From the NCBI GenBank assembly GCA_964057225.1, contig OZ059898.1, positions 11,036,001 to 11,100,000 on the forward strand: DNA of 64,000 bases, read 5' to 3'. The notes under the pieces are model-generated. The model was not told the origin of the DNA and did not search any database. It saw only the letters and a list, made by a program, of their open reading frames with translations. The stretch is from Auanema rhodensis. Lineage: Eukaryota; Animalia; Nematoda. Shown here one piece after another: positions 3,001 to 57,533 of this stretch (positions are counted from its first letter, which is position 1; every line of letters starts with the position of its first letter). Both the position numbers and the translations under genes were made by a program.

Positions 3001-4080
3001 CTATTTTTTGTACTATTAATAAGATTATTTTTTTGGCCAATTAATTGATTATCGAAAGATGTTTGCTAAAGAAATTTGACAGAGGTGATTGAAGAACGTT
3101 AAATCATCATGAAGCAGACGACGTGGTACGATGATTTCAGTTGTCTGCACACTGCCGCTGGCTTCAAAAGATATAAAACGATTAAAAAAACTATTGTTTC
3201 TCAAAAAATAATAGCAAAACCGAATGATTTTTAGACGAACACGAATTAGTCGACCGCACAAATTGAATGAACGACAAAAAACCAACTGCAGGCTTGAAGT
3301 TTTTTTTCGTTTGCAATCGCCATCAGCTGAGACCTGGCACCTTGTGCCCCAAAAGATGTAAAAAATGATCAACTATAGGTTGGTTGGATCACTGAAGTTA
3401 AGGACCAGAGGACAAGTAAGTCAAAAATCAGAACCAATAGCAGCCGACATGTTAGTAGGGACAGATGGAAAGAAAATAGTTGAGGGAAGCATTGTAAAAG
3501 TCACTTTCATCCACTTATTATAGCAATTGAAGAAGGTGAAGAATGAAGATTATGATGCTGTTAGGCTTGAAATGCAGTTGAATTAACTGAGTAATTGTTA
3601 TTGAGGAAGCTAAAAATTTAGAATAATAAGATTAAAAATTGTTGTGGGTGTTCAGAAAAAAATGATTTCTCGCCTCATTTACGTGGATTAAAAAAATAAA
3701 AAGCCAGGAAGATGTATAACCCTGCTAGAGACGATGTCGGATGTTATCTCAGGCAATGCTGTGTAGCTCACAAGCTCATTGTAGTTGTAGTGTGATGTAT
3801 GAAAAAAACAAAAAAAAAGGTTTGTTTCTTCAGCGGTAAAATCAGATACTAGACTTTGATCAACAACAATATGTTTCAGATAAAAAGTTTATAATTTTTT
3901 TTATAAAATTGCAGAAGAATTATAGGGAATATGTGTTATGTTCAAAGCCAAGAGGCTGTTCAGAGCAGCGAGAAAATAGGAAAAAACAAGGAACGAATTT
4001 TGGGAATATATGAAGATAGATAAGGAGAAGGTAGAAACAAAAAAAGAGACAGTCATATGAAAAAGAGGAAAAGGGAAAAC

Positions 4081-49988: not shown

Positions 49989-52631
49989 GGTATTAAACTC
50001 AAACTTTCTATACATTTTTACTTGAAAACGAAAAAAAGTGAAAGTCGGACAATAACATATTCACCACATCTATAACTTTATGGGATCAGTTCTAAACCAT
50101 TATTGTATTCTGTAAATAGTGGAAGTGTTGGTCGAGGACATGAAAAATTTCAAAGAACATCTGAGTTTTAAAAAATTCAAGAAATCCGGTTAATGGTGAA
50201 CATTTATATACTTAAAAGTAAATCCGCAACAATTTTAAACAAAAATGTAAAATAGTTTACGAAATTTGAGTTTTTTTTGTGAAGATTGGTAAGAGAACAC
50301 TCAAACGATAGTATTTTAAAAGACAAATTAATTACTTCTATGAGAGAACAAGAAACATATAAATCGTAAAATATCAGATATATCTAAAAAGAAACAAGTT
50401 ATGGTTCGCTGAAAGAACCTATGGTGTTGGATTTTTAAAGTATGAATAAACTGAACAACAATATATAATCATGAGAAATTGAATAGAATATACATATAGT
50501 AAATGAATGAAGAAGAAGAAGATTGAATATAGAATGCGAAAGAGAAAGGCAGATAGAATATTTGCTTATATGACCATAGTTGGATGGGTACGAGAACAGT
50601 GGAGGAGATGAGAATGAATGTTCGAGTTGATCAAATATGGTAACCGGCTGACTAAAGAACTTGATGAGGCTATTGTGAACCGGAATAGATAGATGAGTTG
50701 AACAACACGATAGCCTTCTGATACGAATAGCGAAACTGCTAACAGATATGCTCTGTCAGCTGGGCGATAGGCTCATATGAAAAATTAGTAAGGTGCAGAT
50801 GACACTAAGATAATAGACAACAGCTTTTGTTTCATATGTTTGTACAGATTTATCTAAACAAAGATAAACTATGTAAAGTGATATACCTGTGATGTTTAAA
50901 AAAAGGAGCAAAATAGAAGCTTATGCATCTGTGTATGATACTTGGAAAGTTGTGGTAATATAAGAATAAAAAATATTGTGGTTTTTTGTGAATTCACAGA
51001 AAAAATCATTGGTTATTCAAATAAAGGATGCAAAAAAGATGAAAAAAATCAAAATGAAAATTCAAGGAAGACGAACAAACTTCAATGACAGGAATATATC
51101 CAGACAGACTGGATGAGGAACATGCTGTGACTGTTGGCCGGATTTTGGATAAAAGGCTAGATAGTTTTCATTCTCATCTGAACAACCACAAAGGAGGTGA
51201 AATAAGATGGCCATGCGGATATAAAGAACTTAGAATGTTTATTAAAACATAGGTAAATAACCGTCTTTCTACACAGAACTTTTGCTTTCCACTTCAACTT
51301 GTTGTCCATCTATCTTTGACGAGTTTATTGATAGAGGAAAACATTTTCATAGATGTTCCTGTCCGAAATAATTCACATTCACTCATATACACATGCATAC
51401 TTTAAATTTCAGACAAACAGTACCATTATTAGTCGATATTACAAGAAAAACCAAAAATAAATAAAAAATTTGATTTTTTGATTGGTTACAACTTATTGTA
51501 ATAGATATATTATGTCTTCTGTACAACTTTCGTAATTTATCTCTATATATAGACGTTTAGGGTTATAATATGATGAGGTCTTCAATTTTTGATTATAATA
51601 TAAATGTTTGTTCTTAGCTTAATGACGTATTCGAATACCGACTCGACCTTCTTTCCTCAACCAAAATTGAAAACAAATTGTTTGAAAATGAACTAAATTT
51701 ACAACCTAATCCTTATAAATCGAGCATATTATTCGTTATCAAAATTTAGTCTTTTATTATCATTGAGTTCTTTTGTTATTCTCGTCAACAACTTCAGGTA
51801 TATGTTGTTAATATTCATTACGAAGTGCTTGTGTACGGAATAAACGAACAACCTGTGATATTATTCATAAATGCATTATAATCATTAAAACCTTTGCTGT
51901 TGTTTCTCCTGCTCAGGATCAAGAAAGATATGATCATAGCTTCCTCATTTACAGAGATTTATCTTTTGTTACACTATGTTTATATTAGATGTTTCGCTAT
52001 ATTCTTGTAACATAGGTTATGACAAAACATTCTCATTTAATTCTTCTTTGGTTTTCATTAATGGTATATCAAGTTTTATTTACTTATCTGATACAAACGT
52101 TCATCCTCTTTTGATTATCAGCTATATTTGATACGAAAACGTAGTTTTCTCTGAAACTTTCAATGAAGCAAGAAAATGAAAAAAAAAGAAGAAAAGTTAT
52201 AGAAAAGAGCTCGAGAGCGAAAAAGTATTTGATTATATGTAGTCTATAAATTATGTGTGTATCTTTTATATTCGAATGCTTATATGAGAATCATAATATA
52301 AAATCATTTAAATTCCATTCTCCCTAACTGAAAATGAAAAATGCCGTTTAATCATAGTGAACATTACGTAGTGAACTCCCTTTTTGTACACACGCAAAAA
52401 TAAAGGGGCTATATCTATGGATTTCCATATTAATAAGTTATAAGTGCCTTCTGATTTTACAAATTTTATCCTTAATATTCAATGCATACATTGTTATCTT
52501 ATCTGTTTCTGGAATCTACTGTTATCTTTTTAGCCTTGCATTGCTCTCGCAGCTGAATTCTTGTTCTTTGTACCTACATCACACCACCACTATTGAGTAT
52601 CAACTAGTTTATTTCTACTCCGAAGCTTAGG

Positions 52632-55600
52632 ATGGTATTTCTAACAATCATTATTATTAGTGGTTTATTATTCCTATTATGGCTCTACTCAAAATACATA
52701 GCGGAGGTCAGTTTTTTTAAATTTATGTTGATATACAACTTGGCATCGATTAATCAATTTGGATATGAGGGAAAATTCCAGGGTTCTAAAAAGTGTAAGT
52801 TCAGATATTACTAATAGTGGTGGTGTGATATAAGGAGTTCATTAAATTAAATGTTTTATTCTTAAATTCTCTATGTTGAACTTTTTTTTTGGAACTGTAC
52901 ACGATTAATCCGAACCGTACGCAACTAGCTTCATTGAAGTTGTTCTTAGGATTAACCGTCAGTTGTTTTTTGTTCTCTGTTCTACATTATTTATTCCGTT
53001 TTCTTTTGCGTCTATGAATATTTTACAGAATTATGCTGCAATCGTAAAACAATTGGCATTAAACTGTATTAATATTCCTAGTGTTTTTCTTGCACATTGC
53101 CACAGTTTAAGCTTATTTTATATTTACAGTTCATGATATCATAATGACGGACTTCACAGATCAACCCCTCGGGTTACTTTGCGAAGTGACACGTCGCGAA
53201 TTGGTTCATTTACTGGAATCTTTACCTGGTCCCAAAGATTTAGTTGTGGATTCTACTTTACTGAGGCCATTAGATAAAGTTGCTTCAATGACACTTCTCC
53301 AAAATCATGGCTGCTCTCGCGTAATGCCTCTGCGAACAGACTCTGTTTTGTCTTGGGATCAAAATATTTCAAGAAGAATATACATCCTTCGGTCATCGTT
53401 CGAAATGGCCCGCTTAGTTTCTCAACACGTTAGAGCCTCTCCTGACAAACAGATAGCAGTTATCTGGGTGGATCGTCGCTTAGCAATATGTGATCGTGAG
53501 CAGGAACGACAAGGTGTTTTCGGAATAGTGGAAAATTTCGAATTGCACATGTGTCTCCTTCCAATTGAAAATGATCTTTTCTCTCTGGAATTACCTTTCA
53601 CTTCACCTCCTAATCTGTTCCAAGCCGCTCATTCGTTATTTCAACTGCAGTCTTTGTACGGACTTATACCTACTGTCTATGGACTTGGAGAACAAACTGA
53701 GAAAATGTGGAAATTACTACGTATGCTTTATGTGGAACGAGGAGAGCCACGAGCCTCACCTGATCAACCAATAAGCCATCTTTTCGTTTTTGATCGTTCT
53801 CTAGATCCTGCATCTGTTCTTATGACAGGCTTGACATATGAAGCTATGTTACACAACGTTTTTACTATTGGATGTGGGAAAATATCATTTGGTTCAGAAG
53901 TGCAGTCACGAATGAAAACTGATTCAAAAGATGGAGAATCTCAAAAGTCCAGGGTGTTCGTCCTGGACAATAATGACGGCGTATTTGCTTCTGTTAGGAA
54001 TAAGCATATGACAGGAGTTTTTCCATTTCTTAGTGCAAAAGCTAAAGAAATTCAATCAACCTATGATAAAGGGGCTTCCATTGACCAAGTTCAAGATATG
54101 AAACAATTTGTATCGCAAGAGTTGAAAGTTCTAAAACAACAACATCGTCAACTTGAAATGCATATATGTGCCTGTGAAGTTCTTTTGGAACGAAACAATG
54201 CTGTTGGAGCAAGCGAACGTCTTCGTTATGAACAAGAGCTTGTTGCTGGAACAGCTAATATTAATGAAATAATAACATATTTGGAAGATTGTTCATTAAG
54301 ACAAGTATCACCATGGCAAGTTCTAGCTTTGATTTGCTTAGCTTCAGTCACCAACAATGGTTTACCTTCCAAAGGCTATCACTCATTTAGAGAGCATTTC
54401 CTGCGAGCATACGGATACGAATATCTGCCTGTTCTTCATAACCTTGGTACGAAGAAACTTTTTTTCGAAAAGATCAAACCTGCAGTTGGCAATATAGTTC
54501 AATCTGCTATTCCAACGATGAACTCAAATTCCAGTGGTGATCAAACACCCACTTTTGCTTTCTTATCGAAGCGACTTAATTTAACTCCCAGTTCGGACGC
54601 AAATCACATCGACTTGAGGAACCCTTCCAAAATGAGCTATGTATTTTCGGGAGTATTCACACCTCCTTTTTGCCAAATAGTGTCAGATGCAATGGTTCAT
54701 GGATGGAATACTAACGACATGAAAAAGACGTTCGGACATGTTTTAGTGGAAGAGAACAGTTATACCCCAGCGGACCGAAAGCCTGACAATCGCATGAAGA
54801 AAGCCATTCTCGTGTTCTTTTTGGGAGGTGTAACATATGCCGAAGTCGCTGCCCTAAGGCTTTTAGCTGTTCAGAACAACTTTCGTATTTTAATAGCAAC
54901 TACGAATATTATCCAGCGTGAACAATATATTCGATGTATGGGAGAAGCGGATTCGAAGCTTCTGTGAGATAAATAAATATCGTTTGATTCAATCAATTAA
55001 TGTTCTGGTCGCTAAAATTCAACGGGTTATGTAAAAGTTTGTAATTTATGTAAGTGGGAGTGAACTCAACTTTGGTGCACCTAAAAGTCAAGTAGAATAA
55101 TTTTTTTATTTTAACATGTTTCAGAAACCGCGGGTTTATACTAAATTTGGGTCTGATCTGTATTGTCGTGTGCACAAGCATTTATCTCTTTTGAATGAGG
55201 TTTTTATCATGTCTAATATTGTTCTGTAAATGAGCATTCAGGAATATAAACCAACATGGTGGTGTCCATTTGGAACTGCAATGACTATAGTTCGACAGGT
55301 TTTCCGCAACTGTCCCAATCTTCCTTTTGAAAGGTATGAAAGTTTTAGATTCTTGAAGTAAGCATTGAATTTCTAGAGAAATTATTACTTTATCAGACTC
55401 TGGAATAGTTGGTATTGACTGGCTAATTCCATCCAAGTCTCATGAAGAGAGTCCCATCATAATTTTCTTACCTGGTATCACAGGTAATATTATATATTTT
55501 TTTTCAAAGGTTTTAATTTTGGAGATAATGGTAAAATCTACTGAAACATTATGTTTTGTTAATCAATTTTGTTATTATTCAGTAGAGAGACATAATATTT

Positions 55601-56797
55601 TTTAAAAAATATATACATTTGTATATTTGAATATATGAGTGTGTATTTATAACTTTTTTATACTATATCCTCACATATGTGCATTAAATTATTCATTTTA
55701 ATTATAGGATCTACTCATGAAAGTGCTTATATTCTTCATTGTGTGACTGAGGCCATTCAACATGATTGGAAATCTGTAGTAGTTAATCCACGAGGATTGG
55801 GTGGAGTTCCTTTGAAAACTAAACAGTAAGTTACTGGATTTCCCTTGAGCATTTGACCGAGGCTTGGTTACACCTTTTAAAATCCTATATACATGTTTTT
55901 CAGAACATATAATGCTTGCTATACAGAAGATATTGATCAGGTTATTCAGATCATAACTGATCGTTATCCTAAAGCCAAAAAAATCGGTTGTGGCTTTAGT
56001 ATGGGAGGGTAGGACTGTAAGAAATTGTTCAGCAGCTAAACAATAATATTCAGAATGATTTTGGGAAGTTATATTTCTACGAAAACTGCGAAAACTGTAA
56101 ATCTGGAAGCAGCAATGATCATATCTTCTCCTTTTGACCCTCATGTTTCTTCCCAGTCCTTAGAGGTTTTTGAGGAATATTCTTGAATTATGATTAATAA
56201 TTCCGCCTTACAGACACCTATTCCTCGTTTTCTTTTCAATCAACATTTAGCTGGATGTCTTGTAAACATCATTAAACCGTTAGTTCTATTTCATACTAAT
56301 TACATAAATCATTACTTTGCAGTTATCGAGAATTATTCAAAGATGTAACTGATTTTGATGAAGTTTTGAAGGCAAAAACTATTCGTAACTTTGATACAAT
56401 ATTTACTAGTCCCGTATTTGGTTACAAAAATTGCCGTGAATATTATGAGGATGCTTCGCTCTGTCGCAAGGTTTTAACTATCTCTCTCAACAATCTCCAA
56501 CCAGCATGGTTGTTTAGGTCCAAAAGTTCCCAATTCCTACTATTTGCCTCAATTCTGTAGATGATGTGTTTGCCCCAATTAAGTGTATGTTTTTTACTTT
56601 CTACTATTACTGTTACATTCGTTTAATTTTCAGCAGTGCCACTTGATGTCATAACTGAATCCGAAAACGTGGTAGCAATTGTAACTGCACATGGAGGACA
56701 TACAGCTTTTATGGAACACTGGAATCCAAACAAACAAGGATTAGTAGAGAAATTGCTCGCACAATGGGGAAATATTATTTTTAATGACCTTGATTAA
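52632..56797 (+). CDS. ABHD1/ABHD3-family alpha/beta hydrolase with N-terminal membrane anchor (host gene)
   Basis: Exon 1 (52632-52706, MVFLTIIIISGLLFLLWLYSKYIAE, phase 0) joins exon 2 at 55125 (tttcag|KPRVY). Later motifs: YKPTWWCPFG, IDWL, IFLPGITGST, VVVNPRGLGG, nucleophile GFSMGG, LNSVDDVFAP (Asp), HGGHTAF (His). TAA at 56795-56797; frame intact. Confidence 0.9.
53121..53129 (+). promoter_or_regulatory. 3' splice / trans-splice acceptor for the nested vps-33 transcript
   Basis: TATTTACAG ends 14 nt before the ATG; a second TTTTACAG lies at 53021-53028. Confidence 0.6.
53144..54967 (+). CDS. vps-33.2: Sec1/Munc18-family protein VPS33 (VPS33B/vps-33.2 type), intronless, nested in ABHD intron 1
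   Basis: 607-aa uninterrupted ORF. LVHLLESLPGPKDL, LLPIENDLFSLELP, HLFVFDR, MKQFVSQELKVLKQQHRQLEMHICACE and ILVFFLGGVTYAEVAALR are Vps33 signatures; the MKxFVSQELK..KQxHR.L..HI.ACE block resembles VPS33B. Confidence 0.92.
   Translation: MTDFTDQPLGLLCEVTRRELVHLLESLPGPKDLVVDSTLLRPLDKVASMTLLQNHGCSRVMPLRTDSVLSWDQNISRRIYILRSSFEMARLVSQHVRASPDKQIAVIWVDRRLAICDREQERQGVFGIVENFELHMCLLPIENDLFSLELPFTSPPNLFQAAHSLFQLQSLYGLIPTVYGLGEQTEKMWKLLRMLYVERGEPRASPDQPISHLFVFDRSLDPASVLMTGLTYEAMLHNVFTIGCGKISFGSEVQSRMKTDSKDGESQKSRVFVLDNNDGVFASVRNKHMTGVFPFLSAKAKEIQSTYDKGASIDQVQDMKQFVSQELKVLKQQHRQLEMHICACEVLLERNNAVGASERLRYEQELVAGTANINEIITYLEDCSLRQVSPWQVLALICLASVTNNGLPSKGYHSFREHFLRAYGYEYLPVLHNLGTKKLFFEKIKPAVGNIVQSAIPTMNSNSSGDQTPTFAFLSKRLNLTPSSDANHIDLRNPSKMSYVFSGVFTPPFCQIVSDAMVHGWNTNDMKKTFGHVLVEENSYTPADRKPDNRMKKAILVFFLGGVTYAEVAALRLLAVQNNFRILIATTNIIQREQYIRCMGEADSKLL
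54972..54977 (+). terminator. AATAAA poly(A) signal of nested vps-33, inside the host intron
   Basis: AATAAA lies 4 nt after the TGA and ~150 nt before the host exon-2 acceptor at 55124. Confidence 0.55.
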
Positions 56798-57533
56798 TAA
56801 GTCATTTGTATCAAAATTTGAAGAGCTTTCTTCATAAATCTCACAAAAAGTTCCATCAAAAGCGCTTTTACGGATCCTTTGAATAATGATATTGAAATTT
56901 TTCCTTAGGCATACTAAACATCCTAGTCAAAAACTCAGATAGATTATTTCGCACGATAAAACAGGTCATACTTAGACTTACTATAATAAATATACGAAAT
57001 TAAAATTTAACTGAACGGAATTTCTTTGTATTTTGTTTCCACCCGCACCAACATTTTCATTGATTTCATAATAAATAAAGTTTTTCTTCCTCCACTAAGA
57101 GTTCTAGAATACAAAGTTTACAAAACATACTTTTTGTAAAAATGATGGTTCTCATGAGCTAACTGAAAGTTTTTTTTGAGCCCTGAAGAGCTGAAGATGA
57201 AGAGCTCACCCTACTGTTCTCCGAGTTCTCCAATTATTTGACTTCGATATTTAACATGTCGATAGTATATTTTAAAGATTTGAACTTAATAAGGAAATTA
57301 TGACATCTATTGCCCAATTATACGAAATCGATTGGAGAATCGGACTGTTGAATCTGTTGAAACCATAAAGAGTAAGTAATCAATCGAGAAATCTAGATGA
57401 AGTAAGCGATTTCGCTTATTGTTGGATAAAAATGTAGGAAGAGTGAGGGAGGAGCCAAATATGTGCTTTTCTTTTGTCACAAGCCTTTAGCCATTTTAGG
57501 CAAATAATAACAAAAAATAGAATTTTAGAATCA

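What the first reader, a model, noticed from the sequence alone, without database searches (positions are those of the whole stretch)
53121..53146. Host exon 1 would splice in frame onto a stop codon overlapping the VPS33 start (TAATG)
Seen: after the acceptor the sequence is TTC ATG ATA TCA TAATG. Cis-splicing from the phase-0 donor at 52706 gives a 29-aa hydrophobic uORF (MVFL...IAE-FMIS*) whose TAA (53142-53144) shares its last A with the VPS33 ATG. With trans-splicing, a 3-codon uORF (ATG 53133) still ends at the same overlap. Established: UAAUG overlaps support termination-reinitiation in some viral and transposon mRNAs. Inference: a translational coupling or dampening device that also prevents a membrane-anchored ABHD-VPS33 fusion.
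Basis: partly seen in the sequence, partly recalled or inferred. Interest (0 to 1): 0.7.

Follow-up and report, generated by a model that had tools for sequence, protein, structure and literature searches.

The report
Tiny upstream ORF abutting VPS33B start
The stop-start overlap is real, but RNA data suggest it lies in the short, probably trans-spliced leader of a roundworm VPS33B mRNA as a 3-codon upstream reading frame, an ordinary kind of translational brake, and not at the end of a 29-residue peptide spliced in from the host gene.

Summary
The sequence is exactly as described. The acceptor AG is at 53128-29, followed by TTC ATG ATA TCA TAA, and the TAA shares its last A with the VPS33B ATG at 53144.

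Spliced RNA contigs from four runs of one study confirm three things:
- ABHD exon 1 (52632-52706) joins exon 2 (55125), skipping VPS33B.
- The acceptor at 53130 is used.
- The VPS33B exon has its own donor (55049) spliced to ABHD exon 2.

No contig joins exon 1 to 53130. In one run VPS33B is well covered, exon 1 is absent, and the contig stops 7 letters upstream of the exon. So the 29-aa uORF isoform is unsupported. A spliced-leader 5' end is the best reading, but the leader itself was not read.

The 3-codon uORF therefore sits on the mature mRNA. A uATG next to the start recurs in four nested relatives (Auanema sp. JU1783, two unnamed rhabditids, Toxocara). The TAATG overlap itself does not: their stops lie 2 nt before the start or 8 nt into the ORF. 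Thelazia (linked to ABHD), L011 (linkage unknown) and non-nested or unlinked strongylids and Mesorhabditis lack a uATG. No TURBS motif is present.

Most likely it is a modest translational attenuator, a known kind, with function untested. The surrounding two-genes-in-one architecture is the more interesting feature.

The parts
52534..52631 (+). 5' untranslated part of ABHD exon 1. The exon starts at the acceptor 52533|52534, which is probably SL1 trans-spliced.
   Evidence: RNA contigs start at 52528-52532. Two of them align over genomic TTTTAG with one mismatch plus 1-4 extra letters, as expected for the SL1 3' end TTTGAG. Canonical SL1 genes are present in the genome. There is no ATG in this stretch. 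It is almost identical in JU1783.
52632..52706 (+). ABHD1/3-like exon 1 coding part: start codon plus a 25-codon hydrophobic anchor, with a phase-0 donor GAG|GTCAGT.
   Evidence: One search gives the sequence. The joint 52706>55125 is seen in runs X1, X2 and X4.
52575..52594 (+). 5' arm of a 20-nt inverted repeat that brackets exon 1.
   Evidence: One search finds 95% complementarity with 52813-52832. The stem closes the MFE and centroid folds. Equivalent repeats occur in JU1783 and L002sp.
52813..52832 (+). 3' arm of the inverted repeat, inside the intron 107 nt downstream of the exon 1 donor.
52707..53129 (+). Intron or outron between ABHD exon 1 and the VPS33B exon. The acceptor AG is at 53128-53129.
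   Evidence: Only low-depth contigs lie here (depth 3-4, against 25-56 for the VPS33B exon) in X2 and X3. X1 has an unspliced contig spanning 52677-55049.
53130..53143 (+). 14-nt genomic leader of the VPS33B mRNA.
   Evidence: Contigs of X2, X3 and X4 begin at 53128, which is the shared AG. X3 carries 5 further letters that do not match the genome.
53133..53144 (+). Mini-uORF ATG ATA TCA TAA (M-I-S-stop). The last A of the TAA is the A of the VPS33B ATG.
   Evidence: The uATG context is TTC-ATG-A, with a weak T at -3. The main ATG context is ATA-ATG-A, with A at -3.
53144..54967 (+). Intronless VPS33B (vps-33.2-like) ORF of 607 aa.
   Evidence: Pfam Sec1 at 1.3e-84. Orthologues are named VPS33B or vps-33.2. 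It is single-copy in the genome.
54968..55049 (+). Segment after the VPS33B stop, ending at the donor TAT|GTAAGT. It contains an AATAAA at 54972.
   Evidence: The joint 55049>55125 (GT..AG, skipping 75 nt) is seen in X3 and X4. The donor is conserved in JU1783 and L002sp. The AATAAA is not conserved in those species.
55125..57090 (+). ABHD exons 2-11 (first exon 55125-55199, stop at 56797, RNA end about 57090). They are shared by the ABHD mRNA and by the VPS33B-containing RNA.
   Evidence: Ten GT..AG joints are seen in all four runs. X3 contig 8 (3273 nt) runs from 53128 through 55049|55125 to 57090.

Best explanation
The stretch 53121-53146 is the 3' splice acceptor and 14-nt leader of the VPS33B mRNA. 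This roundworm is a relative of Auanema.

The VPS33B exon lies in intron 1 of an ABHD1/3-like gene. It receives its 5' end at 53130, most probably by spliced-leader trans-splicing and not from ABHD exon 1.

The mature mRNA therefore starts, after the leader, with a 3-codon uORF (AUG AUA UCA UAA) whose stop shares one base with the VPS33B AUG.

The inferred mechanism has two parts. The uAUG is in weak context, so most scanning 40S subunits leak past it to the good-context main AUG 11 nt downstream. Subunits that do start at the uAUG terminate on top of the main AUG and mostly fail to reinitiate. The net effect would be a modest, roughly constant lowering of VPS33B output.

What is shown: the sequence, use of the acceptor, absence of an exon 1 to 53130 joint in the contigs, and recurrence of the uATG in relatives.
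What is inferred: the identity of the leader and any effect on translation.
For: - Sequence and frames.
- Acceptor use: VPS33B contigs of three runs begin exactly at the AG (53128). X3 adds 5 non-genomic letters and then ends.
- No exon 1 on the VPS33B RNA: in X3 the bins over exon 1 have depth 0 while VPS33B has 55.6. In X1 a contig runs unbroken through 53128, so no competing junction survived there. No 52706>53130 joint appears in any run, whereas 52706>55125 is seen in three.
- The genome has canonical SL1 genes, and the ABHD 5' end shows the SL1-like mismatch pattern.
- In non-nested strongylids the same acceptor sits 4 nt before the ATG. This fits an ordinary trans-splice site.
- A uATG within 7-13 nt of the start is present in JU1783, L002sp, L003sp (in an mRNA contig) and Toxocara. 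The flanking leader and intron are otherwise unalignable. Chance per lineage is 0.12-0.16.
- In C. elegans, SL1 mRNAs that keep a uAUG are translated about 1.8-fold less (PMC5580712).
- Short uORFs that overlap the main start usually act negatively, with access by leaky scanning (PMC10275272).
Against: - The spliced leader itself was not read. The 5 extra letters in X3 are not shown, and SL1 and exon 1 both end in GAG.
- Contigs drop rare variants, so a minor or NMD-degraded exon 1 to 53130 isoform cannot be excluded.
- All four runs come from one study.
- The uATG is absent in Thelazia (linked to ABHD), in L011 (linkage unknown), and in the strongylids and Mesorhabditis.
- The stop position is not conserved.
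- With only about 3 independent lineages, the conservation argument is weak (roughly p about 0.01, post hoc).
- There is no ribosome or reporter data.
Confidence: 0.55

Rival explanations
1. ABHD exon 1 is cis-spliced to 53130, giving a 29-aa hydrophobic uORF. Termination at UAAUG is coupled to reinitiation on VPS33B, and the stop also prevents an anchor-VPS33 fusion.
For: The donor at 52706 is phase 0 and the frame does run into the TAA. In JU1783 and L002sp the exon 1 frame also stops within 0-6 codons of the acceptor. A single pre-mRNA covering exon 1 and VPS33B exists in unspliced form (X1 contig 52677-55049).
Against: No 52706>53130 joint appears in four runs. In X3, VPS33B is present without exon 1. 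The VPS33B contigs extend only 2-7 nt upstream of the exon, where about 30 nt would be expected for a cis junction. No UGGGA/TURBS motif is present in exon 1, the leader or the intron. Early out-of-frame stops are expected by chance in A+T-rich sequence.
Confidence: 0.08
2. The mini-uORF is a neutral accident of an A+T-rich leader, with no selected role and a negligible effect.
For: A uATG arises in 14% of random 14-nt leaders of this composition, and a uATG with its stop next to the start in 6%. The TAATG overlap itself is not conserved. A uATG is absent in Thelazia, L011, the strongylids and Mesorhabditis. The weak -3 T context suggests most ribosomes ignore it.
Against: The uATG is kept in four rhabditid lineages and also occurs in Toxocara, although the surrounding leader and intron have diverged beyond alignment. 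Whenever the spacing changed, the uORF still ended within 8 nt of the start and did not run on (in this species the alternative frame would overlap about 45 codons, read by eye). uAUGs are depleted in trans-spliced leaders of C. elegans.
Confidence: 0.27
3. The mini-uORF is a positive or regulated reinitiation element. It would be a very short uORF served by DENR/MCTS1-type factors, so that VPS33B output depends on reinitiation capacity and is not simply reduced.
For: Very short uORFs are the class that depends on DENR-MCT-1 (reviewed in PMC10275272). L002sp has a one-codon AUG-UGA form, and all forms end at or near the main AUG.
Against: The stop overlaps or lies past the main AUG, leaving no room to reacquire initiator tRNA. 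In three species the uORF stop lies inside the main ORF, which favours leaky scanning. Nothing here tests the factors involved.
Confidence: 0.1

Closest known systems
Short upstream ORFs in trans-spliced nematode leaders (uAUG effect described for C. elegans, PMC5580712)
   Same: There is a uAUG between the trans-splice acceptor and the start codon. It is out of frame and gives a short peptide. The expected effect is a roughly 1.4- to 1.8-fold lower translation.
   Different: The stop shares a base with the main AUG. The uATG is kept across several genera. The mRNA belongs to a gene nested in another gene's intron. No measurement exists for this species.
Virus-type termination-reinitiation at UAAUG or AUGA (influenza B M1/BM2, calicivirus VP1/VP2, hypovirus CHV1; PMC10275272, PMC2699510)
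   Same: The same pentanucleotide geometry (UAAUG here, AUGNNUGA-type overlaps in relatives), with the two frames out of register.
   Different: Those systems follow a long translated ORF and need an upstream rRNA-complementary element (TURBS). Here the upstream ORF is 3 codons, the mRNA has only about 36 nt before the overlap, and no UGGGA motif is present.
Minimal 'start-stop' uORFs (AUG directly followed by a stop)
   Same: L002sp has AUG-UGA one base before the VPS33B AUG. The window has a 3-codon version at the same site.
   Different: It is not minimal in this species. Stalling or regulation is unknown. This comparison rests on general knowledge, not on a test here.
Cholinergic locus unc-17/cha-1 and unc-60 of C. 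elegans (PMC3875643)
   Same: One gene lies in the first intron of another on the same strand, and alternative processing of one locus gives two unrelated proteins.
   Different: Those loci share a 5' exon. Here no shared 5' exon is seen. Instead the VPS33B exon is spliced at its 3' side onto ABHD exons 2-11, so the two RNAs share 3' exons.

Membership tests
Short uORF translational attenuator | The uAUG lies in the 5' leader of the mature mRNA. | tested here: met
   RNA contigs of three runs start at the acceptor AG (53128) and contain 53130-53146. The uATG is at 53133.
Short uORF translational attenuator | The uORF is conserved in relatives beyond chance. | tested here: inconclusive
   A uATG is present in JU1783, L002sp, L003sp and Toxocara. 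It is absent in Thelazia, L011, three strongylids and Mesorhabditis. Chance is 0.12-0.16 per lineage, and few lineages are independent.
Short uORF translational attenuator | Ribosomes initiate at the uAUG and main-ORF output rises when it is removed. | not testable with these tools
   There are no ribosome profiling or reporter data.
TURBS-type termination-reinitiation | Stop and start overlap (UAAUG or AUGA). | tested here: met
   TAATG is at 53142-53146.
TURBS-type termination-reinitiation | A long upstream ORF is translated on the same mRNA. | tested here: not met
   No exon 1 to 53130 joint is found, and VPS33B RNA is present without exon 1 in X3. The uORF on the observed RNA is 3 codons.
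TURBS-type termination-reinitiation | An upstream 18S-complementary motif (UGGGA) lies within about 90 nt of the overlap. | tested here: not met
   No TGGGA is found in the leader, SL1, exon 1 or the intron.
SL trans-spliced nematode mRNA | Non-genomic spliced-leader sequence is joined at a 3' splice site. | tested here: inconclusive
   X3 has 5 non-genomic letters before the AG, but their identity is not shown. Contigs end 2-7 nt upstream. SL1 genes are present in more than 3400 copies.
Nested locus with a shared 5' exon (unc-17/cha-1 type) | A common first exon is spliced alternatively to either gene. | tested here: not met
   Only 52706>55125 is seen. There is no 52706>53130 joint.
VPS33B / vps-33.2 (Sec1 family) | A full-length Sec1 domain and orthology to proteins named VPS33B. 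| tested here: met
   Pfam Sec1 at 1.3e-84 over residues 31-597. Best named hits are VPS33B or vps-33.2, and Branchiostoma VPS33B matches at 38% identity.

The most novel reading that the evidence does not exclude
The mini-uORF is one part of a conserved switch. In this reading, one pre-mRNA gives either ABHD mRNA (exon 1 joined to exon 2) or a trans-spliced VPS33B mRNA that carries ABHD exons 2-11 as its 3' part. A conserved stem that loops out exon 1 and its donor would decide between cis- and trans-splicing. The start-abutting uORF would then set how much VPS33B is made from that unusual bicistronic RNA.
Probability: 0.15. Interest if true: 0.65.

Novelty: new member of a known kind. Interest (0 to 1): 0.3.

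Why it matters
By itself this is a small regulatory detail: one more short uORF, here touching the start codon of a membrane-trafficking gene. Its value is that it forced a look at the RNA.

The RNA shows that the nested VPS33B exon is a true internal exon. It has an acceptor that is probably trans-spliced and a conserved donor joined to the host's exon 2. VPS33B and the ABHD lipase-like gene therefore share 3' exons, an arrangement also seen in an mRNA contig of another genus.

If the uORF and the exon 1 stem prove functional, the locus would be a compact model for how nematodes choose between cis- and trans-splicing, and for how they translate the first cistron of a natural bicistronic mRNA.

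Tried and rejected
- Looking up the window's own VPS33B in public assemblies, to read the 5' ends of its RNA contigs, returned nothing. Records of this genome are withheld, so the leader letters could not be read.
- I used the single reads call on 51900-57300. It gives contigs, not raw reads, so starts, strand and rare isoforms are not shown.
- Short-peptide tblastn for ABHD exon 1 upstream of VPS33B in Toxocara, Thelazia and Anisakis found nothing convincing. Nesting, as opposed to mere linkage, in clade III therefore remains unproven. The JU1783 query was cut one base off and is void.
- The last contig look-up (L011) gave an unspliced contig without a uATG and no leader.
- I considered reading TCAAG at the 5' end of the L003 mRNA contig as the end of an SL2-type leader. 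Five letters recalled from memory are not evidence, so this is left open.
- I considered an ABHD start inside the end of VPS33B, as the gene caller proposed in L003. In the window that frame is closed by a stop 6 codons before the junction.
- The proximal AATAAA at 54972 as the VPS33B poly(A) signal is not conserved in JU1783 or L002sp, and contigs read through it.
- A findings search for SL2, operon and uORF notes in this genome was blank. A paper search for vps-33.2 / C44C1.5 / abhd-3 / Auanema was blank.
Exons were handled by reference. One local script read the three frames across the observed 55049|55125 junction only.

Full report
**Observation.**
- An acceptor tract ends in AG at 53128-29.
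- It is followed by TTC, ATG (53133), ATA, TCA and TAA (53142-44).
- The last A of the TAA is the A of an ATG at 53144. That ATG opens an intronless 607-codon ORF ending at 54967.
- The ORF is a full-length Sec1-family protein (Pfam 1.3e-84). Its named orthologues are VPS33B / vps-33.2, and it is single-copy in this genome.
- Upstream, an ATG at 52632 opens 25 hydrophobic codons that end at a phase-0 donor after 52706. The '29-aa uORF' arithmetic is therefore right, provided that donor were joined to 53130.

**Organism and gene models.**
- By eye, the exon after VPS33B starts at 55125 with K-P-R-V-Y. This continues the anchor exon in the way ABHD1/3 proteins do; that comparison is from memory and is only a lead.
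- The RNA settles the model. Four runs of one study hold spliced contigs. The joint 52706>55125 (GT..AG) is present in X1, X2 and X4, and ten further GT..AG joints define ABHD exons 2-11 up to about 57090.
- VPS33B is therefore truly nested on the same strand in ABHD intron 1, as finding s1-422416 says.

**What joins the acceptor at 53130.**
- Contigs of X2, X3 and X4 begin exactly at 53128, the AG that an intron, SL1 and exon 1 would all share. X3 has 5 more letters that do not match the genome and then ends.
- No run has a 52706>53130 joint.
- In X1 a contig of unspliced RNA runs unbroken from 52677 to 55049, so no competing junction survived assembly at 53128 in that run.
- In X3 the VPS33B exon has depth 55.6, while the bins over exon 1 are empty and the exon 1-exon 2 joint is absent.
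- A cis junction to a well-covered exon would have carried the contig about 30 nt into exon 1. A 22-nt spliced leader at the very 5' end of the molecules explains the 2-7 nt stubs.
- The genome has canonical SL1 genes in more than 3400 copies.
- The ABHD 5' end at 52534 shows the pattern expected of SL1: alignment over genomic TTTTAG with one mismatch plus 1-4 extra letters.
- In strongylids, where VPS33B is not nested, the same kind of acceptor lies 4 nt before the ATG.
- I conclude that 53130 is most probably a trans-splice site. The 29-aa uORF isoform is at best rare.
- Limits: the leader letters were not readable, contigs drop rare forms, and all runs are one study.

**The uORF in relatives.**

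| Species | Sequence from acceptor to main start | uORF relation to main start |
|---|---|---|
| Window | cag / TTC ATG ATA TCA TA-ATG | Stop overlaps the AUG by 1 nt |
| JU1783 (exon 1 3701-3775, acceptor before 3988) | TAT ATG ATA GGA A-ATG ACT GA | uATG kept; stop 8 nt into the main ORF |
| L002sp (unnamed rhabditid, 76% identity, unspliced contig, nested) | TGA ATG TGA C-ATG | One-codon uORF ending 2 nt before the start; the exon 1 frame would stop at once |
| L003sp (another rhabditid, mRNA contig) | ATG ATC C-ATG GCT GA | Stop inside the main ORF |
| Toxocara | gcag / ATG AGC AAG AAG T-ATG GCT GA | Stop inside the main ORF |
| Anisakis | Ambiguous | Not scored |

- There is no uATG in Thelazia, which is linked to ABHD, or in L011.
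- There is also none in Necator, Haemonchus, the strongylid L004 or Mesorhabditis. Necator, Haemonchus and Mesorhabditis have no ABHD exons after VPS33B. For L004 the linkage is unknown.
- The TAATG overlap is thus specific to this species. What recurs is a uATG a few bases after the acceptor, with a uORF that ends at or just past the start.
- The leader and intron around it are otherwise unalignable between these species.
- Simulated leaders of the same length and local composition carry a uATG in 12-16% of trials, and one ending next to the start in 6-11%.
- With perhaps three independent lineages, this is suggestive (order 0.01, post hoc) but not proof.

**Mechanism (inferred).**
- On an SL-capped mRNA the uAUG would lie about 26 nt from the cap, in weak context (T at -3). 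The main AUG is 11 nt further on, with A at -3.
- The expected behaviour is leaky scanning past the uAUG for most subunits. The rest would be lost, because termination on top of the main AUG leaves no room to reacquire initiator tRNA.
- The review read states that short uORFs overlapping the main start usually act negatively, and that the main ORF is reached by leaky scanning.
- In C. elegans, SL1 mRNAs that keep a uAUG are translated about 1.8-fold less, and trans-splicing normally trims uAUGs away.
- Virus-type termination-reinitiation shares the UAAUG geometry. However, it follows a long ORF and needs a TURBS element. Neither is present here, and there is no UGGGA in the leader, SL1, exon 1 or the intron.
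- I therefore file the element as a short uORF attenuator. It works only superficially like the viral overlaps.

**Context found on the way.**
- The VPS33B exon also has a donor. The joint 55049>55125 (GT..AG, 75 nt) is seen in X3 and X4, and X3 contig 8 (3273 nt) runs from 53128 through that joint and all ABHD exons to 57090.
- An mRNA contig of L003sp has the same layout: VPS33B, then 17 nt, then ABHD from K-P-R-L-Y onward.
- The donor after the VPS33B stop is conserved in JU1783 and L002sp, which have no AATAAA between stop and donor.
- Gene predictions in Heterorhabditis, Anisakis, Thelazia and Toxocara fuse VPS33B to ABHD at the same K-P-R/K motif. The linkage is therefore old, although I could not locate exon 1 in clade III.
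- In the window the ABHD frame is closed 6 codons before the junction, so the ABHD part of this RNA is probably untranslated.
- A 20-nt inverted repeat (52575-52594 / 52813-52832, 95%) encloses exon 1 and its donor. Equivalents occur in JU1783 and L002sp, where the outer part of the stem differs in sequence but still pairs. The stem closes the MFE and centroid folds in all three species (z -2.4, -1.3, -1.3).
- Whether the stem hides the exon 1 donor, so that 53130 is trans-spliced, is speculation.

**Comparison, novelty and verdict.**
- The nearest locus-level analogues are unc-17/cha-1 and unc-60. Those loci share a 5' exon, which is tested here and not met; this locus shares 3' exons.
- No paper linking vps-33.2 with this ABHD gene was found.
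- The finding itself is a real sequence feature of a known kind, with untested function. The cis-spliced 29-aa uORF is not supported. Interest is low to moderate, and the surrounding architecture deserves more attention than the overlap.

Noticed in passing
window 54968-55125 and 53128-57090: The VPS33B exon has its own donor (TAT|GTAAGT after 55049), spliced to ABHD exon 2 at 55125 in runs X3 and X4. One 3273-nt contig carries VPS33B plus ABHD exons 2-11. The same bicistronic layout is in an mRNA contig of another rhabditid (L003: VPS33B 18-1850, then ABHD).
   Followed up: partly
window 52575-52594 and 52813-52832; L001 3642-3658 / 3888-3904; L002 68-87 / 252-271: A conserved inverted repeat (core CACCACCA / TGGTGGTG) brackets ABHD exon 1 and its donor in three species. 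The outer stem differs in sequence but still pairs in L002sp. It closes the predicted RNA fold in all three. It may be a splicing switch or a pair of protein-binding sites.
   Followed up: partly
window 52443-52804 in run X3: One of the four RNA runs has no contig over ABHD exon 1 and no exon 1-exon 2 joint, although VPS33B and ABHD exons 2-11 are well covered. This suggests sample-specific isoform use. The sample identity is coded.
   Followed up: no
window 52553-52620 vs L001 3622-3690: The untranslated part of ABHD exon 1 is almost identical between the window and Auanema sp. JU1783. It is more conserved than the coding part of the exon and far more than the intron.
   Followed up: no
G000:C3:6741531-6766487 and C3:14134320-14139114: Canonical SL1 spliced-leader genes occur in more than 3400 matches, in long tandem arrays with periods of about 252 and 341 bp.
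   Followed up: no
L005 3001-4833, L006 4001-5827, L007 4001-14597, L008 4001-7473: VPS33B is intronless in the window, in JU1783's VPS33 part, in L002sp, Necator and Haemonchus. It has introns in Toxocara and Mesorhabditis. In Necator and Haemonchus a DM-domain gene on the opposite strand follows it in place of the ABHD exons.
   Followed up: partly
L003 1814-2920: In the L003sp mRNA contig an ATG inside the end of VPS33B (other frame) is open into ABHD exon 2, giving a possible anchor-less 368-aa ABHD. The equivalent frame is closed in the window.
   Followed up: partly
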